From contig OZ241834.1 of the NCBI GenBank assembly GCA_965202585.1, forward strand, positions 20,770,001 through 20,834,000: a stretch of DNA of 64,000 nucleotides, written 5' to 3'. Below, piece after piece: positions 1 to 50,357 of the stretch. The notes beneath the pieces are model-generated. The model had not been told where the DNA came from, did not search any database, and worked only from the letters and a program-made list of their open reading frames with translations. Positions within the stretch are counted from its first letter, which is position 1, and every line of letters starts with the position of its first letter. Origin of the DNA: Thalia democratica (lineage: Eukaryota). A program made the translations under genes and the position numbers.

Positions 1-504
1 AAGTAGTTTTTCTCTTAAGTACAAACTTTTGAGCCAAAAAATTGTGTTCGAAATGTAATTTAGTCTGGTATTTCTTATACACGCACTTTTCGGCTGTGTT
101 CAAAATAGTTTACAGGGCTTGAGAAAATAAGTTACTGTTGTTTTCTTATAAGCCCAGTGAAGTGTATAAAAATACTTAAATATTAAAAAGCCTTGTGTAA
201 TCAGTAATCAATTCTGTTTAAATATGAATTGTTTTGAAACTTTTAGGGTAGTGGTGGACAACTTTTGTAGTCAGCGATTCATATTTACTAAAAAATCATT
301 TCTTGTTTCAACTCGTTTAAAAAATGTAATTGCGGGCTGCATAATTTACAAAAATAACATGTAGAAAACTAAAAGACTTGAGCATAATTGTAATAAAATG
401 ATTTACTATTATTGTGATCTAGGAAATACTAAAGTAACTAAAAACCAAATTGAAAGTGTATTTCAAAATCATAAACATCAAAAAACTAAATTTTAATTAT
501 TTTG

Positions 505-2837: not shown

Positions 2838-4009
2838 TCAACAGTAAGCCTAAAGTGGCGTTTTTATTAACCATATCTATAATTGATTGCTAATAAAGAA
2901 ATGTTGTTACAATTATAAACTGCTTAATTGTAAAATTCAAAATAATTAATAAAAGTGATAAAGCAAATTTCTAAACTATCATCTTAAGTGTAAAAGCTTT
3001 GATATTTTTAAGCCGGTAGAAATAATATTTTAAGATTTTATATATTAAAATAGCAAGATACTTTAGATAATTAGATAAAATAAAATAACTTTAAAAAATT
3101 GTTAGTTAGGTTAAACATTAATATATTTTATAATATTCAGTTCCATTAGAAAAAATACAAAGAATTTTTTTTTGAAAATGTTTAAGTCAAAAGTTAATGC
3201 TGCTAGTAATAAAATAAATTACTTAAAACAAACTAAATTTTAACTATTGAAAACTTTATAAATGCACCTATTAGAATAAATTTTAAAATAAGTTTAAGTG
3301 TAGCTACAGCTTAATGCTCAAACTTTTTTTTAACTTAAAAATTCAAAATACAAATTACTAGATAGTTTCAAATGCAAACTAACCGTGTTTATATAAATGA
3401 AGTGAAAACTTTCTAATTAATGAAATTAAGATAAAAACTTATCAGGCAAAAAATAAGTTTAAGAAATAAAAGTTTTACATGATCAAAAATAGTTAAGCAT
3501 ACTTTTTAATCGAATATTTATTTTTCAATAATTAAGAAATATTTATTGCTAACTTATTGTGTTTAAATCCTTTACCTATACAAATACTTTACGATAGAGT
3601 TTTTTATAAGTATTTATTTTTACAAATTTTAGTTTTTACAATAAAGAACAAGATATTTGAGTTTAAGTAATGTTTTGCGTGTATCAAATACAGCTGCATT
3701 TTAAAAAAGAAACTTAATTGTTTAAAGTTTAAAAGTCTTTAATCAAAAAAATATTTCAACTTGTAATTTTTATTATACTTTTTCAAGTATTTGAAACCTA
3801 ATTTTGTAAGGTAATTTTTTTAAATCCTGTATTCGCTCAAACGAATATTTTAATACATACTTTTAGTTTAAAGTTTTAGCAACAAAAGCTTGAAGCATTA
3901 TACACAACAGTATCTAGTCTTCAAAAAGTGTTTTGTAAGGGATTTTTTACTTTATAGCAAATACTTAAAATGATGTGACGTAACAAAAAACCCTTTTGTT
4001 GAATAGCTT

Positions 4010-4262
4010 ATCTGAAGCTCGATATCAAAAGTTTTGACATTTCTTTTTCAACTTGTTGTGTTAACTTTTGAGCTACACACGTTTAAAAGTTTTAAAGATG
4101 ATGTTTCACCAACATTAAGCTATTGCTTCAACACCTTTTGTTGAAATATTGATTGTTGTTACAGCTTGTATTTGACCTTTTATGTACTTTATTAAGAATA
4201 ATGTAATTACTTTTGACAAGCTTTGAGTCTTTTAAGGTTTTATAAGTTTTTTGTTAGCTTTT
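4010..4262. repeat. Dispersed repeat; uninterrupted homolog of the sequence split by the PLE insertion at 36.5-44.5 kb
   Basis: Aligns with 36355-36558 and continues without a break into 44453-44520 (AATGTAATTACTTTTGACAAGCTTTGAGTC vs CATGAAATTACTATTGACAAGTTTTAAGTC). Confidence 0.8.
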
Positions 4263-7971: not shown

Positions 7972-8984
7972 AATTTTGTTTTATTTGTACTGAAATGAAG
8001 TATATTTTGTTTTAATAAAAACAACTTTATCCAACAACTAATCACTATTTAAGTAAAACAAAAAGTGGTTTATATAACCAATAAACAACAGTTTTAATTT
8101 TTGAAGCTAATCAGTCTGAAAAATATATTTCGTTTGTTAAACTTTTTTGATAAATATTTAATTTGAAAATCGAGATTTAAACAAACGAAAGATCTCCTTA
8201 AGTATTTAGTTTTTAGAAATGACACATATATATTTAAACATTATTTATCATTTTAAACAATTTTGGTTTTAAAATTACCAAAAGCTGTTTAAGTCTTCTC
8301 TGAAAAAGACAGACCACCTGCAATGCATAGTATTCATCCTAATTATTAAGTAGAAACTAAGTGATCTATACTTGAGACTTTTAACTCTTCAATTTGTAGT
8401 TATTTAGATAAACTTTATCGTGATTTATAACATCAATTTAAATTGGTCAACGTAGATTTAATGGTCATAGCATCAACTAAGGGTCAGTAGCCTTATATAA
8501 AAAACGGGCAAAAAAAGTAGGTCGCGGTTTGCAGTTTTTAGAAATACTTTTTTTTAACAGTAAAAAGTATATTAAATTAAAAATGTGATAAAAATACAGT
8601 ATTAAAGAACTAGTAAATGATATGTTTAATAAATTAAGCTAAATTTTTGAAGAATGTCTGATTAGTAAGATTGTGGTAGTAAAAAAATACTATTTTTTTG
8701 TAAATACTAATAGAAATAACTGGCAACAACTTTGAAATATCAAAACTTCAATTGTCCATATCTGAATAGTCGTTCACCGCAAACAAAAATAGCTACTTAA
8801 CAAAATTCTAAACTAAGTAACTTTAATCTATTATTAGCTGAAAACTTAAAAGGTAATTATGTACAAAATCTTTTTCTAAGTTTTTATTAATTCGAAATTT
8901 AAACAAATTTTAAAATCGTTGAAAATTATTTCAATCTTAGTTCCATATAACTTTTCTATTTTTTCGGGGGAATTTTTAACTAAA

Positions 8985-10045
8985 ATCCATCGTAAATTAA
9001 ATTCAGAAGCATTATATGTTCCGTGGGCATCTTTTGGTCCAGTCAAGCAGAAGTTAGGAGTTTTAACGGGTATGGTGAAGCGTTTCACCTGACTTTGTTC
9101 TCTTTGCTTTCTTGAAGGCGAGTTGAAAACACTTCAAAACACTTTCCTTTCCCTTGGTTATCCAGGTAACTTAGTTTCGAAAGTTATAACAAGAGCTGAA
9201 GTTCAACAGCTTTAAAAATGATTGGCCCTCAGAAGTGTCCGGTATACTTAAAACTTCCTTACCTTGAAAATATTTCTGAGAGGTTTTCTAAGAAAATTTC
9301 AGAGGAAATAAACCAAGTTTTCAGCTCTGTTCACTTAAGAACAGTTTTGTATACTGATCGACCTCTAAGTGGAATTTACAAAGATGTTTCTCCCACCCAT
9401 GAAAAAAGTAACATCATCTATAAATTTAGTTGTCACTGTGGTAGTGACTACGTGGGAAAAACATCTCAAAGGTTTCATGTAAGAATCGATCAGCATGTTC
9501 CGAAAGTCTTGAAAACCTTGTTTGATGGCCGTTCTGAGAAACCAACGAAAAAATAGTTCTCGGCGATTGGGCAACATTTGTTGGACAATCCTGAGTGTGT
9601 TAAAAATTATAAAAAGGACAATTTTTCAGTCTTAGTAAGAGGGGAGAACTATTTTCAATTGCATATTTTTGGAAGCCTTATGTATTCAATCTTTAAGGCT
9701 TAGTTTATGTAAGCAGAAAAAGTTCGTACACCAAACTAGACTTTTCAAATCTTTGTATTAGTAATTTTAAAGTAATTAGTTTCTTGTTAAATTTTAATTT
9801 TAAATAAAGTTTTAATTTTAATTTTTTTCGCTTGTTTATTTAGATTGTTTTAATTCTAACGAGTTTTATTAGTATACCAAATTTATTTAGCACAAGCACG
9901 TTTTTAATTTTTAACATTTGATTATTACGTCATTTTATATCTTGAAACTTAAAACTTCAGTATGATTTTATTTCAATTTGTTTTTATTCCAATTCAGTAA
10001 GGAACTATTTCTGATGAGCCTTACCACGAAAGTACTAAAATAAAT
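8985..10045 (+). mobile_element. 5'-truncated, decayed Penelope-like retroelement (different family from the 36-44 kb element)
   Basis: RT-thumb remnant (ALYVPWASFGPVKQKLGVL...LGYP) with stops, GIY-YIG motif IIYKFSCHCGSDYVGKTSQRFHVRIDQH in ORF 9218-9556, SAIGQHL after a stop, then a hammerhead-like motif in the 3' UTR. Confidence 0.8.
10006..10042 (+). ncRNA. Minimal type I hammerhead ribozyme motif, partly decayed
   Basis: TATTT-CTGATGAG-ccttacca-CGAAA-GTAC-TA-AAATA: canonical core, 5-bp stem I, palindromic AGTACT stem III as in PLE minimal hammerheads; stem II weak. Confidence 0.6.
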
Positions 10046-31978: not shown

Positions 31979-33716
31979 CTACTGTACAACACATTTCTCT
32001 TGTTTACTTCCAGACATATATCTATTTTTTTCATCATTTAACTTTTTTATTTGAAACTCTAGTTCTTTGACACGGTTTTCTAAAGTTTGTATTTCATTTT
32101 TTAATTTTACTTCATTTAACATAAAATCCTTTTGTTCTTCTTGACTTTTTTCTTCAGACAGTTTGAGTTCTTTAATTTTTTGTTCAACTTGAACATATTT
32201 TATACGATTGCTTTCGATCATTTCTCTCTTTTCATTTTCTATAAATGCAAATTCTTCTGTATGCTTTTTGATTAACTCTGAACGAATCTTTTCTCTTTCT
32301 TCGCCGTCTTTCCGCAGCTCTTCTATCTCGGCTTTTTTTTCTTCGTTACGTTTTGTATTTTCTTCTCTTATTTGATCCAGCAAATTTTTGTGCTTTTCCA
32401 TTTCTTTATTTAGCTTTTCTTCAAGCTTTTCAATTTCGTTGTTACAATTCTGAATCTGATTTTTTAGTTTATTGACAGTTTTTAGTTCTTCTTCCCTTAA
32501 TTTTTTCTTGTTTTTTGCCTCAAAAACTTCGACTAATTTGACAAATTTTTCATCTATTGCTTCTTTTAGCCTACGTTCATAATCATTCTTTATTGTTTTA
32601 TCAATATCTGTTGACGTTGAAAAGCTATAAATAACCTCATTTTTAAGTTTAAAGTGTTGCTTGGTTAAGTCAAAAATACTTTTATGATTACTTTCATTTA
32701 TACCGTGGCAATAATTTTTGTTACATTGGTCGTGGAGCTTTCTGTAAAAAAACTCTGACGTAGCCTGTCCGGGAGTGTTGTCGTCAGGAATGTCGGTTGT
32801 TGTGTAATGTTTGATGAAGTCATTGAACATTACGGGTAGATCGCTGCATTTAATTTTATCTATTCCAGCAATTCGCTTTTCCCTACCGTACGAATGCTTA
32901 ATGACGTCACAGACAAAACTGCTCATCTCTTGCACAAAACCTTGCTTAACGGACCCTAATGTGCCTTTTTGGTTTAGTTCCATTCCTGGGTTAGGCATCA
33001 AAAAGCACTTGATATCTTCAAAAGAACTACACAGTATTTTTTTATGATCCTTCATAGCATCTTTCTCAAACCAACTTTCATTTAAGTACATTGCTCCCCC
33101 TTCAAACCCAAAATCGTGTTCTTTTCTGTGTCTCCAATCACGAATGAGGACTATCAAAGATTGAAAAGGACACTTTTCTTTTTTTTCTGAAAAAAGTTTA
33201 GCGTATGTTGAAAACATCTCCAGATTTGCCAGCTTATCTTTGCTCAGCTCTCTGTACGTTGTAAATCTGCACGCTGCTTATAAGAGTACTTAGAGAAAAC
33301 AAGATTTTGTTTTCCTTCTCAGTAGACTCGTTGTCGAAGGTACCTTGTGTGTCGATTAGTAGAAAAGCTTTTTCGGTTTCTCTCAGCTTAATTTTAAATA
33401 TTTTACTGTATGCCAGCATCCCTTTAGTTTCGCGAACACTACCTGGTTTGTATTTAAAACCTGAAAAGTCGTCTGGAATGCCACTAATTTTGTCAAGAGG
33501 TGTCCCTTTTTCCATTTTAGACAATCGGTCAATAAACCAATTCAAAAGAAAGGACTTGCCTGAGCGATAAGGTCCCGCAACAACTAAAACAACAACTTCC
33601 AGAATATCTACATTGTTAAACTGTACAATGCTTTCAAAGCTGTCTTTGTGATAAACTATGTCTTCATTGTCTTGTGAATAAGACACTATTTGAACTGCTT
33701 TCGGGTTTGCATGCAT
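31979..33716 (-). pseudogene. Paralogous atlastin/GBP-like GTPase split by a 2-nt frameshift near 33255; C-terminal CaaX (CVVQ)
   Basis: ORF 33234-33716 is nearly identical to the paralog N-terminus; ORF 31979-33217 continues the GTPase (LIRDW, CFLMPNPG) and coiled coil. AACGTACAGAGAG vs AACGTCACCAGAGAG in the intact paralog. Confidence 0.78.
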
Positions 33717-35252: not shown

Positions 35253-36542
35253 TGTTTTTATCAATTGTATATATCAAACATATATATATATATAAAAGGA
35301 AGGAGAAGAAGTATACAATATTAAATGCTCCATTCAACAAAAGTGTAGCAACACGGGTAAGGAAACGCTTTCTAGAGATTGTGGATAAAAAATTTACTGA
35401 AGACCATCCATATGTCAAAGCTTGTTATGTAGTTTTTTTATTAGATAAAATTGTTTTTGAATAAAAAAACTTAGTTAGTAAAATTTTTTTAGTTAAGTTT
35501 TATTCAATAATAAGTTGGTAAATGTTAACTAAAGTCTGTAGGTATTAATTTCATTAACTGTTAAAACCTTACAAATGCACCTATGCAAATGAAAGTCAAG
35601 TTTGAATATAGCTAAGGCTTAAGGTTATTTATTTTAGCTTAGACTAGTAAGAAAATCCTAAGTATATGATTTTTAAGCAACAAAGATACATACTATTAGG
35701 TATTTTAAAATAAAAAATTACCATATTTAAATGCTTAGAGTAAAAGTTTGATAAAAATAAAAGTAAGAATAAAAATATTATTTGGTAAAATTAAGGTTCA
35801 AAAATTTAAATTTTTTCATGAATTAAAATGAAGAAGACGTTTTTATCCGAATATTTAATTTTAAGATTTGAAAACAATATTTCCAGCTTTTTCTAGTGTT
35901 GAAATTTCTATTTTATAAAGAAAAATTTTGATAACATCTGCTTTAAGTATGGATATTTGTAAATGTTTTTTATTTATATAAAAAGCAAGGAGTGAAGAGT
36001 TTTAAAACAAAACATAAATTAAATATAGTTACAAATTTTCAAAAAAATAAAATACTTATTTAATTTAAATCCAAAACTGCTGACTTTAATCAATAAAAAT
36101 GTTTTATTAACTCATTAAAGTTTTTGAGTTTGTATATTTTTTCAAGCATTAAAAATAGAGATTTGTAAACTAATTTTTAAAATACTGAATTCGATTAAAC
36201 GAACAATTTAAAACATACGCTTAATTTAAAATTTTAGCAATAAAAACTTTAAGCACCCTATACAAAAATTTATGTTCTTGAAAAGTGTTTTGTGTCGCAT
36301 TTTTTTCTTTATTTGTTTAAACTGATATTAAAGAACCCGTTTGTTAACTAAGTTATATTAAGCCGATATCAAAAGCTTTGACATTTCTTTTCAACTTGTT
36401 ATGTTAACTTTTGAGCTACTCACGTTTAATAGTTTTAAAGATGATGTTTCACCAACATTAAGCTACTGCTTCAAAAATTTTAGTTGAAATAATGATCGTT
36501 GTTACAGCTTGTACTTGACCTTTTATGAAGTTTACTAAAAAG

Positions 36543-36558
36543 CATGAAATTACTATTG
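36543..36558. other. Left target-site duplication (16 bp, CATGAAATTACTATTG)
   Basis: Identical 16-mer at 44453-44468 on the other side of the PLE insertion. Confidence 0.9.
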
Positions 36559-36630
36559 TAGGAAGGTTTTTGAATGTATTTATATACCATTTGCAACTTA
36601 ATACCAATAGGTTCATTTTGTTTTTTATAT

Positions 36631-36686
36631 TTTATTACACAAAGCTTTTCAAAATCATGCAAGATTTCTTTGTCAAGTGATAAATT
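36631..36686 (-). ncRNA. Candidate variant minimal hammerhead ribozyme in PLE UTR (copy 1 of 4)
   Basis: Reverse complement of the motif at 41621-41672. Confidence 0.42.
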
Positions 36687-36815
36687 TTAAATGAAATTTG
36701 AAAAAATTTTCGTTGAGTGAATAGCTTAAAAAATAACTTTTAATTATGACGTATGAATAAATTAAAACAAATACAAAAATTAGAGATTCAGTAATTAAAA
36801 CTAAAGGCATGTTTA

Positions 36816-39341
36816 TTAATAGATTGTTAATAACTTTGTTTTGCCATTTAATGCTACTTGCGTATTTAAGTTAGGTCGCTCTTCTTCAATCAATATTGAT
36901 TCCAGGCTGTAAAGTTCGCTTTTCTTACATCGTTTTAAAACTTTAAAATTTTGAACAATGTCAGAGTTTTGACAGGATGTGCAATTAAAAAGATGTTCAA
37001 ATATTGCGCTGTTTTTATCTGTTCCGCAGTGGTCTGTAATTCGTCGGAATATTTGCCGTGATGTTTCTCCAATGTAAGAGATGCTCTGATCTGCAGAGCA
37101 GGTATATTTATAAATAACATTTGCGTCAAATACTTCCGAACATTTACTTTTGTTGCTGAAGTAGTCAGAAACCTTTTTGCTGGTGTAGGCCGGTTTAATA
37201 CTAATGTTGTGTTTTTGAAATATGGATGCTATTCGTTTTTGGAACCTTATTGAACAGCTTCCAACGTAAACTGTTGTGAAATAAGCGTAGTTTTCGGTTT
37301 CTATTTTCTTTTCATTTTTTGTGTTAATATTTTCATTTTGTTTAAATGTTGAATTGTCGATTTTGTGAGCTTCAAGAAATTTGTTGATTTTGGACTTTAT
37401 AAGGTTTATTGGATACTGATTCTTGAGTAATAAGTTTTCAATTTTTGTAAGTTCATCTTTAAAAGCGGTAAAATTTGAGCATATATTAAGCGCTCTGTTT
37501 AGATAAAAGTTTATTAAACCGAGTTTCCAAGATTTAGGACAAATACTAGTATATTGCATAATTAGACCTGTGTCTGTTGGTTTTCTGTACACATTTGTGT
37601 GTAGTTGGTTTGATATTTGTTTTACTTCAGTGTCGAGAAACGGTAGTTTTCCGTCAACGGATCTTTCTAGAGTGAATTCTAAGTTTGGGTGTAGAGTATT
37701 CATTTCATGATAGAAGTTTGTTAGTTCAGTTTGGTCTTGTGTGACAACGAATATATCATCTACATACCTTGTGTAGAATAGAGGTTTTGTTTTTGAATTT
37801 GTTTGTAATTGGTAATTTTCTTTTGATGCTACAAACCAATTGGCTAGGATTGGGGCTAATGGGCTGCCCATTGCAACACCGTCTATTTGTTTGTAGACTT
37901 TTTCACCATAAAGGAAAATACTTTGGGAGCACAACTGTAAAATTTTTCTTAATATATTTTTAGTAATTTTAGTTTCTTTAAAAATTGATTTGATATTTGT
38001 GTCATAAATTGTTGTTAATATGTCTTCAATTACTTCTTTTAGCGGAACGTGTGTATATAGGCTTTTGATGTCTAAACTAGCAAAAGCGTTTGAGTGTTTT
38101 ATATTTAGCTTGGATATTTTGTTAACAAATTCATTTGATGATGAAACGCTATATTTGTCATACAAGCAACTTTTTATTTGTTTTTCTAACCATTTAGCTA
38201 GATTGTACTCTGGGGTGTTGATAGCTGATAATACTGGCCTTATTGGATAATTTTCTTTGTGCGTTTTTACTACACCATATAATTTGCCTGGTTGTGAGCC
38301 TCGTGGATAAATATTGTAATAGGTTTTTTGGTTAACTATGTTTTTAATATAATTTCTGCAATAATAAATGACTTTGTTTTCTTGTATAATCCATGGGGCT
38401 AATTTACATTCTTTTGTGTTTACGGAATTAAGATTATACTTTATTTCTTCAAAACGGTTTTTGTCTAGAACAATTTTATCTAACTTTTTAAAATAATCTG
38501 ACTTATTTAAGACGACAACTCCATTACCTTTATCCATTTTGCATACAATTATTGATGAGTTTTTTGAAAGATTACTAAGTGTTTTATGTATTAATTGGTT
38601 TGGTCTGGCTTCACATTTGTTTTGTGCATCATTAATAAACTTTTCTGTTGTGTCACGAAGATCAATTTTGTCATTAAAGGTTAGGTTAATTTTGTTACTC
38701 GTTGAGATTTTTCTTATTTGAGTGTCAATATTGGCGCGTAGTTTAACTTTGTCTATGCTTTTTGGTAAAATACTATGTTTAAGTCCATATTTAAGAGCGT
38801 TGTTTTCAGTAAGAGTGAGTTTTTTTGAGCTAATATTTACGATAGTTTTTGGTAAGTTTTTGTTATTCTTAATCCATAAATTATAAAGCTTTTTGTTGTG
38901 TCTTTCAATTATGCTCTTTTTATAGTTAGATATTGAATTATTTCTTAGATTATTTTTAAACACAATGAATTTAAATGTACTTGTTTTAGCTTTTAGTGAC
39001 TGATAAATTTGTTTGAACTCACGTTTTTTTGTTTTCAATTCATTAATAATTAGTTTTCTTTGATCCGATACTACCTTTAGTTGGTAATCTTGTTGTCTGT
39101 AGACTTCTAAATCTGGTGGATTAAACTTTAAAAATGCTGGTATGAGCTTCATTTCCAAACATTTGTCAAAATATTTTGCATCTAGTTTTAATTTGGTTAC
39201 TTTTTGGTAAAGTTTTTCAAAACTTCTTAACTCTTTTAATTGTATACCTTCGCATGCTGCAATTCTTTTCATAAGTACTATTGTAGGAAGGTTTTTGAAT
39301 GTATTTATATACCATTTGCAACTTAATACCAATAGGTTCAT
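36816..39341 (-). CDS. Penelope-like RT + GIY-YIG endonuclease, full-length, 841 aa
   Basis: RT motifs KLYGVVKTHK, LDIKSLYT, GVAMGSPLAP, RYVDDIF, LPFLD; GIY-YIG VIYKYTC...YIGETSR..RR..H; translation identical to 41688-44213. Confidence 0.95.
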   Translation of the reverse strand: MNLLVLSCKWYINTFKNLPTIVLMKRIAACEGIQLKELRSFEKLYQKVTKLKLDAKYFDKCLEMKLIPAFLKFNPPDLEVYRQQDYQLKVVSDQRKLIINELKTKKREFKQIYQSLKAKTSTFKFIVFKNNLRNNSISNYKKSIIERHNKKLYNLWIKNNKNLPKTIVNISSKKLTLTENNALKYGLKHSILPKSIDKVKLRANIDTQIRKISTSNKINLTFNDKIDLRDTTEKFINDAQNKCEARPNQLIHKTLSNLSKNSSIIVCKMDKGNGVVVLNKSDYFKKLDKIVLDKNRFEEIKYNLNSVNTKECKLAPWIIQENKVIYYCRNYIKNIVNQKTYYNIYPRGSQPGKLYGVVKTHKENYPIRPVLSAINTPEYNLAKWLEKQIKSCLYDKYSVSSSNEFVNKISKLNIKHSNAFASLDIKSLYTHVPLKEVIEDILTTIYDTNIKSIFKETKITKNILRKILQLCSQSIFLYGEKVYKQIDGVAMGSPLAPILANWFVASKENYQLQTNSKTKPLFYTRYVDDIFVVTQDQTELTNFYHEMNTLHPNLEFTLERSVDGKLPFLDTEVKQISNQLHTNVYRKPTDTGLIMQYTSICPKSWKLGLINFYLNRALNICSNFTAFKDELTKIENLLLKNQYPINLIKSKINKFLEAHKIDNSTFKQNENINTKNEKKIETENYAYFTTVYVGSCSIRFQKRIASIFQKHNISIKPAYTSKKVSDYFSNKSKCSEVFDANVIYKYTCSADQSISYIGETSRQIFRRITDHCGTDKNSAIFEHLFNCTSCQNSDIVQNFKVLKRCKKSELYSLESILIEEERPNLNTQVALNGKTKLLTIY

Positions 39342-39355
39342 TTTGTTTTTTATAT

Positions 39356-39411
39356 TTTATTACACAAAGCTTTTCAAAATCATGCAAGATTTCTTTGTCA
39401 AGTGATAAATT
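39356..39411 (-). ncRNA. Candidate variant minimal hammerhead ribozyme in PLE UTR (copy 2 of 4)
   Basis: Same motif, one unit (2725 bp) from copy 1. Confidence 0.42.
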
Positions 39412-39706
39412 TTAAATGAAATTTGAAAAAATTTTCGTTGAGTGAATAGCTTAAAAAATAACTTTTAATTATGACGTATGAATAAATTAAAACAAATACA
39501 AAAATTAGAGATTCAGTAATTAAAACTAAAGGCATGTTTATTAATAGATTGTTAATAACTTTGTTTTGCCATTTAATGCTACTTGCGTATTTAAGTTAGG
39601 TCGCTCTTCTTCAATCAATATTGATTCCAGGCTGTAAAGTTCGCTTTTCTTACATCGTTTTAAAACTTTAAAATTTTGAACAATGTCAGAGTTTTGACAG
39701 GATGTG

Positions 39707-41488
39707 CAATTAATACATAAAACACTTAGTAATCTTTCAAAAAACTCATCAATAATTGTATGCAAAATGGATAAAGGTAATGGAGTTGTCGTCTTAAATA
39801 AGTCAGATTATTTTAAAAAGTTAGATAAAATTGTTCTAGACAAAAACCGTTTTGAAGAAATAAAGTATAATCTTAATTCCGTAAACACAAAAGAATGTAA
39901 ATTAGCCCCATGGATTATACAAGAAAACAAAGTCATTTATTATTGCAGAAATTATATTAAAAACATAGTTAACCAAAAAACCTATTACAATATTTATCCA
40001 CGAGGCTCACAACCAGGCAAATTATATGGTGTAGTAAAAACGCACAAAGAAAATTATCCAATAAGGCCAGTATTATCAGCTATCAACACCCCAGAGTACA
40101 ATCTAGCTAAATGGTTAGAAAAACAAATAAAAAGTTGCTTGTATGACAAATATAGCGTTTCATCATCAAATGAATTTGTTAACAAAATATCCAAGCTAAA
40201 TATAAAACACTCAAACGCTTTTGCTAGTTTAGACATCAAAAGCCTATATACACACGTTCCGCTAAAAGAAGTAATTGAAGACATATTAACAACAATTTAT
40301 GACACAAATATCAAATCAATTTTTAAAGAAACTAAAATTACTAAAAATATATTAAGAAAAATTTTACAGTTGTGCTCCCAAAGTATTTTCCTTTATGGTG
40401 AAAAAGTCTACAAACAAATAGACGGTGTTGCAATGGGCAGCCCATTAGCCCCAATCCTAGCCAATTGGTTTGTAGCATCAAAAGAAAATTACCAATTACA
40501 AACAAATTCAAAAACAAAACCTCTATTCTACACAAGGTATGTAGATGATATATTCGTTGTCACACAAGACCAAACTGAACTAACAAACTTCTATCATGAA
40601 ATGAATACTCTACACCCAAACTTAGAATTCACTCTAGAAAGATCCGTTGACGGAAAACTACCGTTTCTCGACACTGAAGTAAAACAAATATCAAACCAAC
40701 TACACACAAATGTGTACAGAAAACCAACAGACACAGGTCTAATTATGCAATATACTAGTATTTGTCCTAAATCTTGGAAACTCGGTTTAATAAACTTTTA
40801 TCTAAACAGAGCGCTTAATATATGCTCAAATTTTACCGCTTTTAAAGATGAACTTACAAAAATTGAAAACTTATTACTCAAGAATCAGTATCCAATAAAC
40901 CTTATAAAGTCCAAAATCAACAAATTTCTTGAAGCTCACAAAATCGACAATTCAACATTTAAACAAAATGAAAATATTAACACAAAAAATGAAAAGAAAA
41001 TAGAAACCGAAAACTACGCTTATTTCACAACAGTTTACGTTGGAAGCTGTTCAATAAGGTTCCAAAAACGAATAGCATCCATATTTCAAAAACACAACAT
41101 TAGTATTAAACCGGCCTACACCAGCAAAAAGGTTTCTGACTACTTCAGCAACAAAAGTAAATGTTCGGAAGTATTTGACGCAAATGTTATTTATAAATAT
41201 ACCTGCTCTGCAGATCAGAGCATCTCTTACATTGGAGAAACATCACGGCAAATATTCCGACGAATTACAGACCACTGCGGAACAGATAAAAACAGCGCAA
41301 TATTTGAACATCTTTTTAATTGCACATCCTGTCAAAACTCTGACATTGTTCAAAATTTTAAAGTTTTAAAACGATGTAAGAAAAGCGAACTTTACAGCCT
41401 GGAATCAATATTGATTGAAGAAGAGCGACCTAACTTAAATACGCAAGTAGCATTAAATGGCAAAACAAAGTTATTAACAATCTATTAA
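39707..41488 (+). CDS. 5'-truncated PLE ORF retaining RT and GIY-YIG domains
   Basis: Identical to the C-terminal ~590 aa of the full ORF; the track start (39704) is a GTG created at the inversion junction, and the first real ATG is MDKGNG. Confidence 0.85.
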   Translation, partial: QLIHKTLSNLSKNSSIIVCKMDKGNGVVVLNKSDYFKKLDKIVLDKNRFEEIKYNLNSVNTKECKLAPWIIQENKVIYYCRNYIKNIVNQKTYYNIYPRGSQPGKLYGVVKTHKENYPIRPVLSAINTPEYNLAKWLEKQIKSCLYDKYSVSSSNEFVNKISKLNIKHSNAFASLDIKSLYTHVPLKEVIEDILTTIYDTNIKSIFKETKITKNILRKILQLCSQSIFLYGEKVYKQIDGVAMGSPLAPILANWFVASKENYQLQTNSKTKPLFYTRYVDDIFVVTQDQTELTNFYHEMNTLHPNLEFTLERSVDGKLPFLDTEVKQISNQLHTNVYRKPTDTGLIMQYTSICPKSWKLGLINFYLNRALNICSNFTAFKDELTKIENLLLKNQYPINLIKSKINKFLEAHKIDNSTFKQNENINTKNEKKIETENYAYFTTVYVGSCSIRFQKRIASIFQKHNISIKPAYTSKKVSDYFSNKSKCSEVFDANVIYKYTCSADQSISYIGETSRQIFRRITDHCGTDKNSAIFEHLFNCTSCQNSDIVQNFKVLKRCKKSELYSLESILIEEERPNLNTQVALNGKTKLLTIY

Positions 41489-41620
41489 TAAACATGCCTT
41501 TAGTTTTAATTACTGAATCTCTAATTTTTGTATTTGTTTTAATTTATTCATACGTCATAATTAAAAGTTATTTTTTAAGCTATTCACTCAACGAAAATTT
41601 TTTCAAATTTCATTTAAAAT

Positions 41621-41672
41621 TTATCACTTGACAAAGAAATCTTGCATGATTTTGAAAAGCTTTGTGTAATAA
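41621..41672 (+). ncRNA. Candidate variant minimal hammerhead ribozyme in PLE UTR (copy 3 of 4)
   Basis: TTATCAC-TTGACAA (U3/A8 variant of CUGANGA)-stem II GAAATC/GATTTT-GAAA-palindromic AAGCTT-GTG; lies in the repeated UTR where PLE hammerheads are known to occur. The cleavage triplet would be UUU and stem I is short. Confidence 0.45.
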
Positions 41673-41687
41673 AATATAAAAAACAAA

Positions 41688-44213
41688 ATGAACCTATTGG
41701 TATTAAGTTGCAAATGGTATATAAATACATTCAAAAACCTTCCTACAATAGTACTTATGAAAAGAATTGCAGCATGCGAAGGTATACAATTAAAAGAGTT
41801 AAGAAGTTTTGAAAAACTTTACCAAAAAGTAACCAAATTAAAACTAGATGCAAAATATTTTGACAAATGTTTGGAAATGAAGCTCATACCAGCATTTTTA
41901 AAGTTTAATCCACCAGATTTAGAAGTCTACAGACAACAAGATTACCAACTAAAGGTAGTATCGGATCAAAGAAAACTAATTATTAATGAATTGAAAACAA
42001 AAAAACGTGAGTTCAAACAAATTTATCAGTCACTAAAAGCTAAAACAAGTACATTTAAATTCATTGTGTTTAAAAATAATCTAAGAAATAATTCAATATC
42101 TAACTATAAAAAGAGCATAATTGAAAGACACAACAAAAAGCTTTATAATTTATGGATTAAGAATAACAAAAACTTACCAAAAACTATCGTAAATATTAGC
42201 TCAAAAAAACTCACTCTTACTGAAAACAACGCTCTTAAATATGGACTTAAACATAGTATTTTACCAAAAAGCATAGACAAAGTTAAACTACGCGCCAATA
42301 TTGACACTCAAATAAGAAAAATCTCAACGAGTAACAAAATTAACCTAACCTTTAATGACAAAATTGATCTTCGTGACACAACAGAAAAGTTTATTAATGA
42401 TGCACAAAACAAATGTGAAGCCAGACCAAACCAATTAATACATAAAACACTTAGTAATCTTTCAAAAAACTCATCAATAATTGTATGCAAAATGGATAAA
42501 GGTAATGGAGTTGTCGTCTTAAATAAGTCAGATTATTTTAAAAAGTTAGATAAAATTGTTCTAGACAAAAACCGTTTTGAAGAAATAAAGTATAATCTTA
42601 ATTCCGTAAACACAAAAGAATGTAAATTAGCCCCATGGATTATACAAGAAAACAAAGTCATTTATTATTGCAGAAATTATATTAAAAACATAGTTAACCA
42701 AAAAACCTATTACAATATTTATCCACGAGGCTCACAACCAGGCAAATTATATGGTGTAGTAAAAACGCACAAAGAAAATTATCCAATAAGGCCAGTATTA
42801 TCAGCTATCAACACCCCAGAGTACAATCTAGCTAAATGGTTAGAAAAACAAATAAAAAGTTGCTTGTATGACAAATATAGCGTTTCATCATCAAATGAAT
42901 TTGTTAACAAAATATCCAAGCTAAATATAAAACACTCAAACGCTTTTGCTAGTTTAGACATCAAAAGCCTATATACACACGTTCCGCTAAAAGAAGTAAT
43001 TGAAGACATATTAACAACAATTTATGACACAAATATCAAATCAATTTTTAAAGAAACTAAAATTACTAAAAATATATTAAGAAAAATTTTACAGTTGTGC
43101 TCCCAAAGTATTTTCCTTTATGGTGAAAAAGTCTACAAACAAATAGACGGTGTTGCAATGGGCAGCCCATTAGCCCCAATCCTAGCCAATTGGTTTGTAG
43201 CATCAAAAGAAAATTACCAATTACAAACAAATTCAAAAACAAAACCTCTATTCTACACAAGGTATGTAGATGATATATTCGTTGTCACACAAGACCAAAC
43301 TGAACTAACAAACTTCTATCATGAAATGAATACTCTACACCCAAACTTAGAATTCACTCTAGAAAGATCCGTTGACGGAAAACTACCGTTTCTCGACACT
43401 GAAGTAAAACAAATATCAAACCAACTACACACAAATGTGTACAGAAAACCAACAGACACAGGTCTAATTATGCAATATACTAGTATTTGTCCTAAATCTT
43501 GGAAACTCGGTTTAATAAACTTTTATCTAAACAGAGCGCTTAATATATGCTCAAATTTTACCGCTTTTAAAGATGAACTTACAAAAATTGAAAACTTATT
43601 ACTCAAGAATCAGTATCCAATAAACCTTATAAAGTCCAAAATCAACAAATTTCTTGAAGCTCACAAAATCGACAATTCAACATTTAAACAAAATGAAAAT
43701 ATTAACACAAAAAATGAAAAGAAAATAGAAACCGAAAACTACGCTTATTTCACAACAGTTTACGTTGGAAGCTGTTCAATAAGGTTCCAAAAACGAATAG
43801 CATCCATATTTCAAAAACACAACATTAGTATTAAACCGGCCTACACCAGCAAAAAGGTTTCTGACTACTTCAGCAACAAAAGTAAATGTTCGGAAGTATT
43901 TGACGCAAATGTTATTTATAAATATACCTGCTCTGCAGATCAGAGCATCTCTTACATTGGAGAAACATCACGGCAAATATTCCGACGAATTACAGACCAC
44001 TGCGGAACAGATAAAAACAGCGCAATATTTGAACATCTTTTTAATTGCACATCCTGTCAAAACTCTGACATTGTTCAAAATTTTAAAGTTTTAAAACGAT
44101 GTAAGAAAAGCGAACTTTACAGCCTGGAATCAATATTGATTGAAGAAGAGCGACCTAACTTAAATACGCAAGTAGCATTAAATGGCAAAACAAAGTTATT
44201 AACAATCTATTAA
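41688..44213 (+). CDS. Penelope-like RT + GIY-YIG endonuclease, full-length, 841 aa
   Basis: Same motifs as 36816-39341; open frame, identical translation. Confidence 0.95.
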   Translation: MNLLVLSCKWYINTFKNLPTIVLMKRIAACEGIQLKELRSFEKLYQKVTKLKLDAKYFDKCLEMKLIPAFLKFNPPDLEVYRQQDYQLKVVSDQRKLIINELKTKKREFKQIYQSLKAKTSTFKFIVFKNNLRNNSISNYKKSIIERHNKKLYNLWIKNNKNLPKTIVNISSKKLTLTENNALKYGLKHSILPKSIDKVKLRANIDTQIRKISTSNKINLTFNDKIDLRDTTEKFINDAQNKCEARPNQLIHKTLSNLSKNSSIIVCKMDKGNGVVVLNKSDYFKKLDKIVLDKNRFEEIKYNLNSVNTKECKLAPWIIQENKVIYYCRNYIKNIVNQKTYYNIYPRGSQPGKLYGVVKTHKENYPIRPVLSAINTPEYNLAKWLEKQIKSCLYDKYSVSSSNEFVNKISKLNIKHSNAFASLDIKSLYTHVPLKEVIEDILTTIYDTNIKSIFKETKITKNILRKILQLCSQSIFLYGEKVYKQIDGVAMGSPLAPILANWFVASKENYQLQTNSKTKPLFYTRYVDDIFVVTQDQTELTNFYHEMNTLHPNLEFTLERSVDGKLPFLDTEVKQISNQLHTNVYRKPTDTGLIMQYTSICPKSWKLGLINFYLNRALNICSNFTAFKDELTKIENLLLKNQYPINLIKSKINKFLEAHKIDNSTFKQNENINTKNEKKIETENYAYFTTVYVGSCSIRFQKRIASIFQKHNISIKPAYTSKKVSDYFSNKSKCSEVFDANVIYKYTCSADQSISYIGETSRQIFRRITDHCGTDKNSAIFEHLFNCTSCQNSDIVQNFKVLKRCKKSELYSLESILIEEERPNLNTQVALNGKTKLLTIY

Positions 44214-44345
44214 TAAACATGCCTTTAGTTTTAATTACTGAATCTCTAATTTTTGTATTTGTTTTAATTTATTCATACGTCATAATTAAAAGTTATTTTT
44301 TAAGCTATTCACTCAACGAAAATTTTTTCAAATTTCATTTAAAAT

Positions 44346-44397
44346 TTATCACTTGACAAAGAAATCTTGCATGATTTTGAAAAGCTTTGTGTAATAA
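44346..44397 (+). ncRNA. Candidate variant minimal hammerhead ribozyme in PLE UTR (copy 4 of 4)
   Basis: Identical to 41621-41672. Confidence 0.45.
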
Positions 44398-44452
44398 AAT
44401 ATAAAAAACAAAATGAACCTATTGGTATTAAGTTGCAAATGGTATATAAATA

Positions 44453-44468
44453 CATGAAATTACTATTG
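44453..44468. other. Right target-site duplication (16 bp)
   Basis: CATGAAATTACTATTG, identical to 36543-36558. Confidence 0.9.
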
Positions 44469-47400
44469 ACAAGTTTTAAGTCTTTTAGGGTTTTATATTT
44501 GTTAGCTGATTTGTTTTCTAAATGACGTGGGAATATTAAAATCAACTTGTAACATAATTAAAAGTTTGAGAAATGCTGCAGAAAAAGCGTAAAAAGTTTT
44601 CACATATATAAGCAACAAAGTATTAACTTTCCTAAAATTTTATAACCTGCTATATTTGAGACACATAAGACTTTTTCTATAAGCAGAAAATCCTTTAAAT
44701 CAATGTAAAGTTTAGTCTTTTTTAACCAACTTATAAAATTTTTAAAAAACCTTCAAAACTAATTTTATTTTTGTAACATCTTCGATCAAGTTTATTCATT
44801 ATCAATAAATTCATTAAGAAGTTATGAAAATTTATAAACGTTTCTTTTTATTTGATTTAGTTTTAAATTAAGTTTTATAAAAAATTAATTAATTGCATAG
44901 TTTCATTTTATTTCAGAGTTAATCATTTTTTTAAATTATTTTGATTATTACACAATCCAAAACAAGCATTTTTTTGTCAAAAAAAACTTAAAAACTGTCA
45001 CTTGTAACTTTTTTTTCTCTTCCCTTATTAAAAACTACGGTGTACGGAATCAACAAAAAAAATAATTTAAAAAAATATATATGTATATATTAAAGTTGCT
45101 ACTCATCCAGACAAAAAAAAACCAGCCTGTGTGACAAGAAGCTAGACTGAGTTTATAAAGAAACGAAACCTGTTTAACGACCATAATAAAATCCCTTAAA
45201 GTTTACAGATGACTATTACATAAAAACCATGACCTAGTATTAACAACCTCTTTACCAAAACGTTCAGCCAGACCGGACAAACTAACGGCTGGCAAGGAGG
45301 TTAATCCCCTCGGTTGCAAGTCTGACTTCAACAGTTAGAGCTTTATTATGTTAATAATACTATACCATGAAAACAAAAGATGTTACTTTACCACTTGAAC
45401 CAAATAATACTTGTTTAAGTTATTAAAATTTTTATTTATTATATCTTATTCTATTCTTAAAAAACATTTTGGAGTTTTTAATAAATTTAATATGAATATT
45501 TATTATTGTATTTCTTGAAGTTTAATTTTTTTATTAAACGTTTAGAAATTAAAGTGTTAATAAAAAATGTTAATGTAAGTAACCTTCTCATAAATGAAAA
45601 TTTAAAGATATTTTAGTTTAGTTAAAAAACAGTGATCTTGTTAAGTATTAAATAAGGTGGATATAAATCTTTAGTATTAGTTTTTAATTATTTTTTTCCA
45701 ACTAAAACATTTAGCGATACCTTATAATTACTGTACATAAAAAACTGTAAGTTACTAGTTTTAAGTGTTGTTGTACGTAACACTTAGCTAAAAACAACTT
45801 TGTTGGTATTAAAAGATGTAATTTTAAACAAATTTTAAAGAAATAAAACTTCTTATTTAGATAGTATTTAGTATTTATGCTTTTAAACAAAAAACTTTCA
45901 AAAACTTATATTTTCGAATGTTTATAAACAAGCTATGTCTTTGCTGAGTTTTAAACGTAACTAAAAAATTGATTTATTATAACAATGTAGCTTAAAATAC
46001 GTGGTATTTTTTGCCGGTGATCATAAGTTTTAGTAAGCTTAACAAATATGTAAATATTTACATCATACAGTTTGAAAATATCAGTAAATATTTCAACTGT
46101 ACAACTGGGAGCCTTTTTTGAACAAAAGTTTAGTTAGTTCTAAATTGACTTTAAAGTTGTAAGCTTTCAGTTAAACTACAAACCTGTATTTCAAAAAAAA
46201 AAGGTTTGAGCAAGGTTTAGTGTGACCAAAAGGTAAACTTTAATATTTATTTCTACAATTTATTTTTTTAGCACATTCTTAATTTGTTTTGAAACTTTGA
46301 TAATGTAATCAAGAACATACTCTTTTTTAAAATTGGATTTGATATTTTGTCTAAAATATTAAACTTTAGCGAGTAAATATAGTATTACTGTAGCTTCTAC
46401 ACTGGTTTAATTTAAATAATAAAAGTTTTAAGTATATGTTTTTAATTATTTTTCAAGACACAGAAACATGTGCTAGTGTAATAAAGAAAGGATACTGTTT
46501 AAATTTGTTATTATTGTATGTTCCAGTGAACTTGTTTCGCTAGGATCTTTATTAGGAAACGCTTAGATTTTTATATTGAATATAATTTAAGTAAAAATTT
46601 CACGAAAGCTATTGCAAAAGCCTACTGTCTTAGCACTAAATTAATTTACTGGAATAAAAAAATGTTTTTTTTAATACCTTTTTTTGGTTTTAATTTGTTG
46701 CAAAAACAAAATTAAAAGAAAACTAACGAGAAGAATACTAAGAGTTGAAACATTGGCAAGCCAGTAATTTTTATTCTGCGGCCAGGTTCGGCCCTTGAGA
46801 CGTACGTTGCCCCACTTCTACTTTAAAGCGCATTTGAAATTTTTTCTCATTCGACGTCTTATTTAGTTAATTAAGATAATCCATAACTTACAAACTGTTT
46901 TCTTACATCAAAATTTTAAATTAAATGCAAAATGATTTTACTCACATACCATTAAGTTCTAACTTATTTTGGTTGTTAATCTGTTCATACAGTCAAACGA
47001 TTTATTAAGATCTAGTTAAACTATACAAAATTATTTACCCTTGTCAAGATATAGCACCCTCAACAATGTCAGAAGATGTAAGTCAATAACATCACTAAGT
47101 TAACCTACAACTTCTAAATCAATATTAAGGTGTTTTGAAATATCAATCTCGATAAAAAAACTAGACAAACTACTGTATCTGATTATTTCAACTATTGTAT
47201 TTAAATTTGACAAAGTTGAAATTAACTTTTAGTTTCCCGGCAATGATTTTTTATCTTATGTTAAACACTGATGTTAGTTTAGTTAATTTTAAGCAATTTG
47301 AATACTTTCTTTCAAAAATCGCACAATTTATGAAATCATTAAGTACTGGAGCTCACTATAAAATAGTTTTTTTCGAGTTATAAAGTAAAAACAAATTTTC

Positions 47401-47851: not shown

Positions 47852-48047
47852 AAGATCATACTTTTAGGGATCATTTCTAAAGTGTGTGTCTCACGAACGT
47901 TGTTAAACAATGACGGTCAACCTCTCACGATGATGAATTGTGGAGCGGTTCTCTGAGCAGGAAAATGACTTCAGCTGGCTGAATGTCGTAATGACTGTTC
48001 TGCTGTTGTCAAGGCAACAGTGGAGGGGAATCTCTCTTTCTGAGTGA
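47852..48047 (+). ncRNA. U3: U3 snoRNA gene, copy 2
   Basis: Box A'/A, C', B and D as in copy 1, with only a few substitutions or indels between copies. Confidence 0.88.
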
Positions 48048-50357
48048 TCAACAACAAGCCTTGAGGGGCTTTTTGCTCTAATAAGTTAATTTTGAGAATG
48101 GTGGCAGAATTATTTTTTTTAAATATAAAGGATACTTTACCGTTTTAAAATACCATCGAATTTTCTAGTTTCAGTATTAACTTAAATCTGTGAAAAATTA
48201 GCTTTTATGAATCATATTGAATATAAACAATTAATTTTGATTTGTTGCATTTAAAAAACAATTAATATTAGATGAGTGGTTGAAAACTTATTTCTCTACT
48301 ACTATTTTTAAAACCTTACATTTTATATTGTAGTTTGTATAAAGCTGCACATTTAAAAGTCTAATTCGTATGTATATTCTAAAAACACGTGGTTTTAAAA
48401 TACTTTTGTTCTAGTCATATTATAAACTTTGCCTTTATAATAACTTAATAATGAATATTTTTATAAAGATTATGAAATCTTAAGAGTCATTGATTTTTTA
48501 AATATTTTCTAAAGCACATTAAAATAGTTTAGAAGTTGTTGTATTTTGCCAGTCATTTCAAATAATTGAAATGACAAGTAGAGTCAGTAAAATATATTTA
48601 ATAAAATAAGTATTACAATTGAAAGTTATTCATAATACCAATTGGTTAAATTAAATTTTACTTACAACTATGGTATAAAAATTATAGTTAGGAGTGAATC
48701 AAAAGAAAGGTATCATCAACTATTAAGTTTATTAACACTGCTTTTTTTAAACGATGATAAATGTTTGAAAATTGTCTTACTAAAAAGGTTACTGTTACAA
48801 ATAGGCCTAAGAAACTAAACAATATTTGAAAATTTGTTTTAGACTCAAAAAACTTTTAAAAACTAACAATGGTATGAAAACACATAAATTTACTAAACGA
48901 TAAAAAAATGCTAAAAATATTTTATTGCACGGTTATCAATTTTTACAATATAAGCTAGTTTAAATCTCTTAGTAACCTTTTAATGGCTAACTTTAAAAAC
49001 TACAAGAATAATTTTAGCTATTATCTAAAAAGACATGATATACCTCATTTTTAATGTGTGTAACATGTTATTTATTGCAACTTTTTAAACGTTCATTAGC
49101 TCACTTAGCTAGTATCCATTTAAGTTATTAGTAGTTAGCAATATTAAACGTAAAAAATAGAAATTTATAACTTTACGATTTTTCTTACAAAATAATAGTA
49201 GAGCTACAAATAGAAATAAACAAAAAGAAAAAAAATTGCTTTATGTTTTAGTCATTAATACGATATACCACTCTTTAATGCAAAAAGATAGCTTGACACC
49301 AAATTAACTTGAGTCAGCCTGAGTAATATTACTATATTAGTAGTATAAATTGTACTAAAATAAAATTTATTTTTTTTAGTAAAATCTAAAATAAAAACAC
49401 TGAACAAATTCATTCTACTAATAAAAAACATAATACTTTGAAAAACTATACTTTTGAAGAAAATAACTAACAAAAGTCAAAAAAAAAACCATATTAATCT
49501 TTGTCCTTAAAAATTTTAACTATGATTTAAATTAAGTTTAATTAAAACTTCCAAGCTGTATACTGAGATAAAATACGCACTCTTAACTCATATACTAAAC
49601 TCTAAATAGCAAATAATCATTTTTCAATATTTTATTAATTAGCAAAGAAAAAATTACAACTTGTAAAAGTAGAAAGTACAACTAATGATGCTAAAAAACT
49701 TTATTTCTAACTCCGTGCTTAAACTTTATCTCTAACGTGCTTTTATTATGAAATTGAGAGAGGCAAAAATAGTTATACATATAAGTGGCAAATAAGTATT
49801 ACATAATTATTATCTAAATGGTACTTAAATAAATAGTAAGTTATTTAAATTTTAATACTGAATTCAATAAAACTGAAATTATATTTTAGTACTTTACTAT
49901 CACAAAAGAAATGACAATCTGTAATAGTTTCAAGGATAGGTGTCAGCATCGCTTATTGACACTTTTGAACGGTGTCACTCTAGCATGGTTGGACACTTTT
50001 GCACAGCGTTACTTTATACAAGGTTGCCAAATTTCCTCCAGGTATAAAATTACACGTTTAAGGGTCTATTTTTAGTTTAGAATTATGTTTAAGGTAAAAA
50101 ACTGTGTTCCGCAGTATAACAATATAGAAAAGATACTTTAGATGTGCTTCTAAAAAAAGTTCGATGACAAAAAAATGTTATCTATACAATAGATTTTAAT
50201 TTAAAATCGAAATTTTATTAATTATTATGTAAAATTAGTTTAAAAGGTTTTAATGTGATTTTGTTCAAAATTCCATATTTTTTTAAAATTGCAGGTTTTT
50301 TATTAATCCTGTCTATATAATAACTGTAATTTAAGTCTTATTTAAATTAGTTAAATT

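What the first reader, a model, noticed from the sequence alone, without database searches (positions are those of the whole stretch)
36543..44468. Head-to-head Penelope concatemer flanked by a single TSD: signature of priming from both target strands
Seen: one 16-bp TSD encloses two oppositely oriented arms whose 3' ends both face outward. Each outer junction has microhomology between TSD end and element (TACTATTG, 8 nt, left, element positions +59..+66; CAT, 3 nt, right, +41..+43), and the arms meet at a 7-nt microhomology (CAATTAA). The uninterrupted target repeat survives at 4010-4262. Known: PLEs often show tandem and inverted partial copies. Inference: both nicked strands primed reverse transcription at slightly different RNA 3' ends with primer-template pairing, and the two cDNAs were joined at their 5' ends. 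This differs from L1 twin priming, where one 3' end lies internal. Intact identical ORFs imply a recent event.
Basis: partly seen in the sequence, partly recalled or inferred. Interest (0 to 1): 0.82.

Follow-up and report, generated by a model that had tools for sequence, protein, structure and literature searches.

The report
Textbook Penelope-like retrotransposon insertion, head-to-head
This is one very young insertion of a Penelope-like jumping gene in the usual shape for that class: two arms facing away from each other, partial tandem repeats, a short extra "tail" on one end and one duplicated target site. It is a clean example of a known pattern, not a new one.

Summary
A 7.9-kb insert (36559-44452) consists of a minus-strand arm of 1.16 units and a plus-strand arm of 1.74 units. 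The unit is 2725 bp and there is no mismatch between copies. The insert is bounded by the 16-mer CATGAAATTACTATTG, and an 80%-identical paralog (3803-4259) carries that site once. The 8-nt and 7-nt overlaps exceed chance; the 3-nt one does not.

The element encodes an 841-aa RT plus C-terminal GIY-YIG protein, so it is a canonical EN+ Penelope-like element. It has no hammerhead ribozyme.

The architecture is the published "typical Penelope structure": an inverted 5'-truncated copy, a partial tandem, a TSD and a one-sided tail (PMC3846280, PMC8557442). A 2024 in vitro study showed a PLE protein cutting and extending both target strands from two adjacent RT start sites (PMC11167929).

Primer-template pairing rests on one junction, and no read data confirmed the inner joint.

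Earlier notes of this scan describe the same head-to-head scar on other pieces of this genome (retrozymes).

Interest is modest.

The parts
36543..36558 (.). Left copy of the 16-bp target-site duplication CATGAAATTACTATTG. Its last 8 nt (36551-36558) are also the element's +66..+59 read on the minus strand.
36551..39713 (-). Left arm, 3163 nt, 1.16 units. Read 5' to 3' on the minus strand it runs ORF +2354 to the unit end, then one full unit, then +1..+66.
36551..36573 (-). The 'tail': element positions +44..+66 (TCAAAAACCTTCCTACAATAGTA, A/C-rich). It is present at the outer end of the left arm only.
   Evidence: compare with PMC3846280 and PMC11167929
36816..39341 (-). Intact 841-aa ORF (RT plus GIY-YIG), identical to the right-arm ORF.
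39707..39713 (.). Head-to-head joint. The 7 nt CAATTAA are shared by both arms, whose 5' ends lie at ORF +2354 (left) and +745 (right).
39707..44455 (+). Right arm, 4749 nt, 1.74 units: a 5'-truncated unit (39707-41730) followed seamlessly by a full unit (41731-44455) that ends at ORF +43.
39707..41488 (+). C-terminal 593 codons of the ORF in the truncated upstream unit.
41688..44213 (+). Intact 841-aa ORF. [quoted passage not shown]
44214..44412 (+). 199-nt spacer between the stop codon and the next ATG (core of the pseudo-LTR). It has no hammerhead motif.
44453..44468 (.). Right copy of the 16-bp duplication. Its first 3 nt (CAT) are also element positions +41..+43.
3803..4259 (+). Uninterrupted paralog of the target (80% identity) that carries the duplicated site once.

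Best explanation
This is one recent retrotransposition of an autonomous Penelope-like element (PLE) with a C-terminal endonuclease. It left the class's standard product: an inverted 5'-truncated copy abutting a partial tandem, a tail at one outer end, and a single target-site duplication.

Most likely course of events (inferred, not shown):
1. The GIY-YIG endonuclease cut both target strands with a stagger of up to 16 nt, leaving two 3' overhangs.
2. Each 3' end primed reverse transcription near the element's two adjacent start sites just inside the ORF. The top strand started at +66 with 8 nt of pairing. The bottom strand started at +43 with little or no pairing.
3. The template was RNA longer than one unit: two molecules, or one multimer of at least 3.15 units.
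4. The two cDNAs stopped at ORF +2354 and +745. Their 3' ends annealed over 7 nt (CAATTAA/TTAATTG) and each was filled in on the other.

Shown directly: the anatomy, the identity of the copies, the coding capacity, the single-copy target site in a paralog, and the statistics of the overlaps.
For: PLE identity:
- RVT_1 hit with E = 4e-11.
- GIY-YIG scores above Pfam's cut-off on the C-terminal piece.
- Relatives carry the animal PLE domain set DUF8422/HTH_animal/RVT_1/GIY-YIG.

Structure and the TSD are confirmed.

A single event:
- One duplication encloses both arms, and neither arm has a duplication of its own.

Two separate reverse transcriptions:
- The left arm carries +44..+66, which the right arm lacks.
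- The right arm is 1586 nt longer than the left.
- So neither arm can be copied from the other.

Both outer ends lie within 23 nt of each other in a 2725-nt unit. That is about 2% by chance if one of them were a random 5' truncation point.

A contig from another sample (X18, loose end at 36550) shows the element ending at the same +66 next to a different flank. This makes +66 a recurrent end.

The positions of the overlaps match what pairing of 3'-overhang tips would give (sequence). The 8-nt and 7-nt overlaps are unlikely by chance.

Literature:
- The same architecture is described as typical, including a pLTR that holds the first 12 or 22 codons of the ORF (PMC3846280; PMC8557442).
- The PAc protein cleaves and extends both strands, and its two RT start sites delimit the tail (PMC11167929).
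Against: - No read or contig confirms the inner joint.
- Only one insertion of this family could be examined, so pairing at the start site rests on a single 8-nt overlap. The 3-nt overlap is chance level.
- The in vitro work reports starts at sites not homologous to the cut DNA. The 8-nt match could instead reflect endonuclease preference for tail-like sequence.
- The RNA around the start sites shows no significant fold (z = 0.40).
- The data cannot say whether one or two RNA molecules were used.
Confidence: 0.6

Rival explanations
1. Reverse transcription was primed from one strand only. The polymerase then switched template to an antisense transcript, or primed on itself, as proposed for Adineta vaga Penelopes. 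The far end was attached to the other target end by 8-nt microhomology annealing, as at L1 5' junctions.
For: PMC3846280 argues for self-priming from palindromes at inverted junctions. A related Tara Oceans contig (L033) does have a 12-nt palindrome, GTGGTGCACCAC, at its head-to-head joint. An 8-nt overlap is also what microhomology-mediated 5' end joining gives.
Against: The joint here is not a mirror: the two 5' ends are 1116 nt apart in unit coordinates. Neither arm can be copied from the other. The left outer end falls at +66, a recurrent end of the family, which a random attachment point would hit about 2% of the time. An antisense transcript would have to start exactly there, and no promoter motif suggests that (sequence reading).
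Confidence: 0.15
2. Assembly artefact. The inner part is a mis-join or a wrong number of identical units, or a chimeric long read produced the inversion.
For: PLE tandem and inverted repeats are known to upset assemblies (PMC8557442). 7.9 kb of 100% identical repeats is hard to assemble. No public contig or indexed word confirms the joint.
Against: Both flanks belong to one locus: they are collinear with the paralog and share a precise 16-bp duplication. The left flank abuts a minus-strand 3' end and the right flank a plus-strand 3' end. An inversion joint must therefore exist between them, whatever the true unit count. A fold-back chimera would give a perfect mirror, which is not seen.
Confidence: 0.1
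3. A composite that already existed was copied as one piece. A master locus with the same head-to-head structure was transcribed end to end and retrotransposed, or two independent insertions landed at the same spot.
For: PLE pLTRs have been suggested to act as bidirectional promoters (PMC3846280). PLE endonucleases can target their own tail sequence.
Against: A read-through RNA would have to begin exactly at the outer base of the left arm. Two insertions would leave two duplications, but only one is present and there are no filler bases. Zero differences across all copies favours one event.
Confidence: 0.05

Closest known systems
Canonical EN+ Penelope-like elements, e.g. Pen2a_Av of Adineta vaga (PMC3846280) and the general scheme in Craig et al. 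2021, Fig. 2 (PMC8557442)
   Same: [quoted passage not shown] Partial tandem pseudo-LTRs. An adjacent inverted 5'-truncated copy. One TSD around the whole insert. A short extension (tail) at one outer end only. A pLTR that runs into the first codons of the ORF: 12 or 22 codons in Pen2a_Av, 14 or 22 here. An overlap at the inverted joint.
   Different: The arms here are much longer than a pLTR: each contains a full ORF. The tail is 23 nt rather than 30-40. The TSD is 16 bp against 8-10 bp. No hammerhead ribozyme motif was found in the unit.
Poseidon PAc of Anolis carolinensis, in vitro system (PMC11167929)
   Same: Both target strands are cut and extended. There are two adjacent RT start sites inside the 5' part of the ORF, and the stretch between them is the tail. 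That stretch is A/C-rich. The template is a tandem transcript.
   Different: The PAc starts lie at +111..118 and are reported as not homologous to the cut DNA. Here the ends are at +43 and +66 and one shows 8 nt of identity with the target. The PAc pLTR carries a hammerhead ribozyme.
L1 twin priming
   Same: The second target 3' end also primes on RNA. The product is inverted next to direct, with one TSD and a microhomology at the inversion joint.
   Different: In L1 the second start is an arbitrary internal site and the two segments are consecutive parts of one RNA. Here both ends sit at the element's start region, the arms overlap in content and exceed unit length, and there is no poly(A).
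Animal non-LTR hammerhead retrozymes in this same genome (earlier scan notes s1-313704, s1-317318)
   Same: Head-to-head halves with a 12-14-bp TSD. Follow-up agents read these as the usual Penelope-style scar.
   Different: They are non-coding 328-nt units with hammerheads. The present element is autonomous and lacks a hammerhead.

Membership tests
Penelope-like elements, canonical C-terminal EN+ type | Reverse transcriptase domain of the PLE type in a single ORF | tested here: met
   RVT_1 E = 4e-11. YVDD motif present. 396 relatives found, the best sharing the HTH_animal/DUF8422/RVT_1 architecture.
Penelope-like elements, canonical C-terminal EN+ type | GIY-YIG endonuclease at the C-terminus | tested here: met
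   PF01541 scores 25.1 bits against a cut-off of 22.6 on aa 742-823. The motif VIYKYTC...SYIGET...R...H is in the translation.
Penelope-like elements, canonical C-terminal EN+ type | Partial tandem organisation giving pseudo-LTRs | tested here: met
   Seamless 2725-nt period in both arms.
Penelope-like elements, canonical C-terminal EN+ type | Optional inverted 5'-truncated copy upstream, with the whole insert flanked by one TSD | tested here: met
Penelope-like elements, canonical C-terminal EN+ type | [quoted passage not shown] | tested here: met
   Positions +44..+66 are present on the left arm only. The tail is 23 nt, against the published 30-40.
Penelope-like elements, canonical C-terminal EN+ type | [quoted passage not shown] | tested here: not met
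   No Rfam hit at E <= 1 over 35500-45500, nor at E <= 10 over the pLTR. No CUGANGA box on either strand of the insert.
Penelope-like elements, canonical C-terminal EN+ type | Placement in a named PLE clade by phylogeny | not tested
L1-type twin-priming product | The outer end of the inverted segment is an arbitrary internal position of the RNA, and the two segments are consecutive, non-overlapping parts of one RNA | tested here: not met
   Both outer ends lie at +43 and +66, and the arms overlap in content. An internal copy of the start site on a multimeric RNA cannot be excluded.
Fold-back (palindromic) read or assembly chimera | Perfect mirror symmetry around the joint | tested here: not met
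   The sequence left of the joint is the reverse complement of ORF +2361 onward. The sequence right of it is ORF +752 onward.

The most novel reading that the evidence does not exclude
PLE integration in general is a symmetric two-strand target-primed reaction. In this reading a dimeric RNP uses the two adjacent start sites on the two strands within one event, base pairing of the overhang tip helps choose the tail-proximal start, and the head-to-head joint forms by 3'-3' annealing of the two cDNAs. This young family has intact ORFs and no hammerhead, so it would be a natural system in which to prove that.
Probability: 0.4. Interest if true: 0.5.

Novelty: new member of a known kind. Interest (0 to 1): 0.3.

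Why it matters
How PLEs generate their tandem and inverted insertions is still called undefined in the field (PMC8557442). This locus is an unusually clean product:
- There are no mutations between copies.
- There are no filler bases at any junction.
- Both arms are longer than a unit.
- Tail-plus and tail-minus ends occur in the same event.

It argues against snap-back self-priming for at least this event. It agrees with the 2024 in vitro finding that both strands are extended. It also shows that the family is probably still active in a marine planktonic animal.

As a single locus without read support it adds an example, not a principle.

Tried and rejected
- **Rfam searches.** I searched the insert for hammerhead or any other RNA family and found nothing. 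There is also no CUGANGA box.
- **Exact-protein look-up.** I looked for other genomic copies encoding exactly this ORF. It is not on record.
- **JGI metagenome scan.** I scanned with an 18-base pattern from the element's 3' end. It returned 32 loci, none with any similarity to the element by blastn, so all are chance matches.
- **Logan contigs laid on 36150-40100.**
  - The contigs are short fragments and none bridges the inner joint.
  - Flank contigs of X17 and X18 differ from the window by 2-3% and stop at 36558.
  - I could not tell whether these are empty alleles or paralogs.
- **Word search around the joint.** An 81-nt query gave only 4 sampled words, and no run held more than one. This is inconclusive.
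- **RNA fold of the start-site region.** It folds no better than shuffles.
- **Bacterial-type promoter and terminator scan.** It is not informative for a eukaryote.
- **Pyatkov et al. 2004 (PMC522041).** The paper is not held, so I could not read it.
- **Literature search for a published twin-priming model for PLEs.** I found none.
- **Explanations rejected.** These are a fold-back chimera, two nested insertions and copying of a pre-formed composite. The reasons are given under the rival explanations.
Full report
**1. What is there**

Repeat finding and direct base comparison show a 2725-nt unit laid out as two opposed arms.

| Arm | Strand | Coordinates | Length | Units |
|---|---|---|---|---|
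| Left | minus | 36551-39713 | 3163 nt | 1.16 |
| Right | plus | 39707-44455 | 4749 nt | 1.74 |

- The two full units are identical at all 2725 positions. The partial units are identical to them as well.
- Each arm holds an intact 841-codon ORF: 36816-39341 on the minus strand and 41688-44213 on the plus strand.
- The right arm also starts with the last 593 codons of a truncated unit.
- With the ORF ATG as +1, the right arm ends at +43 and the left arm at +66.
- The unit therefore ends a few codons into the next ORF, after a 199-nt spacer.
- The arms' 5' ends lie at +745 (right) and +2354 (left) and share the 7 nt CAATTAA at 39707-39713.
- No junction has extra bases.

**2. The duplication and the empty site**

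- CATGAAATTACTATTG occurs only at 36543-36558 and 44453-44468 in the window.
- The flanks joined through one copy of it align at 80% identity to 3803-4259.
- Across the site itself, the stretch aligned (4096-4298) has no gap and carries the site once.
- The insertion is thus later than an old local duplication that also carries a U3 snoRNA gene.
- The last 8 nt of the left copy and the first 3 nt of the right copy are also element sequence. The real stagger is therefore between 5 and 16 nt.

**3. Chance**

Simulations used the window's own sequence.

| Overlap | Length | Probability by chance |
|---|---|---|
| TACTATTG (left outer junction) | 8 nt | 8.5e-5 |
| CAT (right outer junction) | 3 nt | 0.03 |
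| CAATTAA (head-to-head joint) | 7 nt | 1e-3 |

The 8-nt and 7-nt overlaps are real features. The CAT overlap carries no weight.

**4. What the element is**

- The ORF matches RVT_1 with E = 4e-11 and has the YVDD motif.
- Its C-terminal 177 aa pass Pfam's GIY-YIG cut-off.
- Its relatives share the animal PLE architecture DUF8422/HTH_animal/RVT_1/GIY-YIG. There are 396 of them at E <= 1e-10, the best at 79% identity on a Tara Oceans metagenome contig.
- It is therefore a canonical Penelope-like element with a C-terminal endonuclease.
- It lacks a hammerhead ribozyme, which is unusual for that group. There is no Rfam hit even at lax thresholds and no CUGANGA box anywhere in the insert.
- I did not assign it to a clade.

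**5. Reads**

All public runs that hold words of this locus are kept as short contigs.

- Laid on 36150-40100, they show that the 3'-terminal ~1.1 kb of the unit is about two orders of magnitude deeper than its 5' half in two runs. That is expected for a family dominated by 5'-truncated copies, or for 3'-biased transcripts. The kind of those runs is not recorded.
- One contig of run X18 has the element ending at the same +66 against a different flank. This makes +66 a recurrent end.
- Marine metagenome contigs carry the family at 98-99% identity.
- No contig bridges 39707-39713, and no indexed run holds more than one of four sampled words around it.

**6. Is the assembly credible without reads?**

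Yes, for the topology.

- The left flank abuts a minus-strand 3' end and the right flank a plus-strand 3' end.
- Both flanks belong to one target site. An inversion joint must therefore lie between them, whatever the exact unit count.
- A fold-back chimera would give a perfect mirror. Here the sequence on the two sides of the joint comes from unit positions 1116 nt apart.
- The number of identical units per arm remains the weakest point.

**7. Mechanism**

Geometry:
- A bottom-strand nick at the left edge of the duplicated site and a top-strand nick at its right edge leave two 3' overhangs.
- The top overhang ends in ...TACTATTG-3', which can pair with CAAUAGUA at +59..+66 of the RNA.
- The bottom overhang ends in the complement of CAT.
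- Extension of each overhang gives exactly the observed orientation, with both element 3' ends facing outward.
- The 3' ends of the two cDNAs are ...CAATTAA-3' and ...TTAATTG-3'. They are complementary, so they can anneal and prime fill-in on each other.

Two facts from the sequence constrain the alternatives:
- The left arm contains +44..+66, which the right arm lacks, and the right arm is 1586 nt longer. Neither arm is a copy of the other.
- Both outer ends fall within 23 nt of each other in a 2725-nt unit. That would be about a 2% coincidence if one of them were a random attachment point.

These facts exclude snap-back copying. They make the single-primer, antisense-template idea of PMC3846280 unlikely here. 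A related Tara Oceans contig does show a 12-nt palindrome at its head-to-head joint, so that route may exist in the lineage.

Template:
- The templates were longer than a unit.
- They were either two RNAs of at least 1.16 and 1.74 units, or one multimer of at least 3.15 units. On a multimer the second start would be an internal copy of the start site, which is formally L1-style twin priming with a 678-nt gap.
- The identical units give no means of choosing between these.

**8. Comparison with what is known**

- The Adineta vaga Pen2a element has an 842-aa ORF, pLTRs, an adjacent inverted pLTR, a 9-bp TSD and a 31-bp tail on one inverted pLTR. Its pLTR holds the first 12 codons of the ORF, or 22 with the tail. 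Its inverted joint has a 15-bp overlap. The authors call this the typical Penelope structure.
- Craig et al. 2021 draw the same scheme and state that the tail is often present at one end only.
- The 2024 PAc study shows cleavage and extension of both strands. It also shows two adjacent RT start sites whose interval is the tail, in an A/C-rich segment inside the ORF start. The tail here is also A/C-rich, with 16 of 23 bases A or C.
- That study reports no homology between the start site and the cut DNA.
- With one locus I cannot separate pairing from endonuclease preference for tail-like targets.
- I found no paper that spells out a two-strand priming model for the inverted copies, and the field calls the cycle undefined.

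**9. Earlier notes of this scan**

Earlier notes report thousands of hammerhead retrozymes in this genome, inserted head-to-head with 12-14-bp duplications and read as Penelope-style scars. They also report a truncated PLE between inverted arms with a 12-bp TSD. I did not test these. They agree that the shape is routine in this genome.

**10. Verdict**

- The object is a new, young and probably active member of a known class, in its standard insertion form.
- Interest is 0.3.

Noticed in passing
window 36543-44468: This C-terminal-EN Penelope-like element has no hammerhead ribozyme motif on either strand. Canonical EN+ clades usually carry one in the pLTR, and this same genome is reported to hold thousands of hammerhead retrozymes.
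   Followed up: partly
window 2641-2838 and 47852-48048: There are two U3 snoRNA genes (Rfam 107 and 111 bits), 87% identical to each other. The first lies next to a diverged ~0.9-kb segment (3345-4259), and the second copy of that segment (35683-36558 plus 44469-44507) received the PLE insertion.
   Followed up: partly
window 8961-9640 (+): A decayed remnant of a distantly related PLE. tblastn gives about 27% identity to aa 576-804 of the ORF, split over two frames.
   Followed up: no
window 25199-27058 (-) and 31979-33217 (-): Long ORFs of guanylate-binding-protein type (GBP/GBP_C). The nearest Atlas clusters are mostly chordate. Together with the Tara Oceans relatives of the PLE, this hints at a marine planktonic animal, possibly a tunicate.
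   Followed up: partly
L033:1-210 (Tara Oceans contig, family 79% identical): The related element is also a partial tandem (68-208 equals 2813-2952). It has a head-to-head joint whose centre is a perfect 12-nt palindrome, GTGGTGCACCAC. This is a different kind of joint from the one in the window.
   Followed up: partly
window 41720-41727 and equivalents (ORF +33..+40): A TATA-like TATATAAA sits just before the tail-less end (+43). It recalls the TATATATA noted in the A. vaga pLTR. No transcript data were examined.
   Followed up: no
window 36150-40100, runs X17 and X18: The summed contig depth of the unit's 3'-terminal ~1.1 kb is about 100 times that of its 5' half. This fits massive 5' truncation in the family, or 3'-biased transcripts. 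Metatranscriptome runs also hold a word of the element.
   Followed up: no
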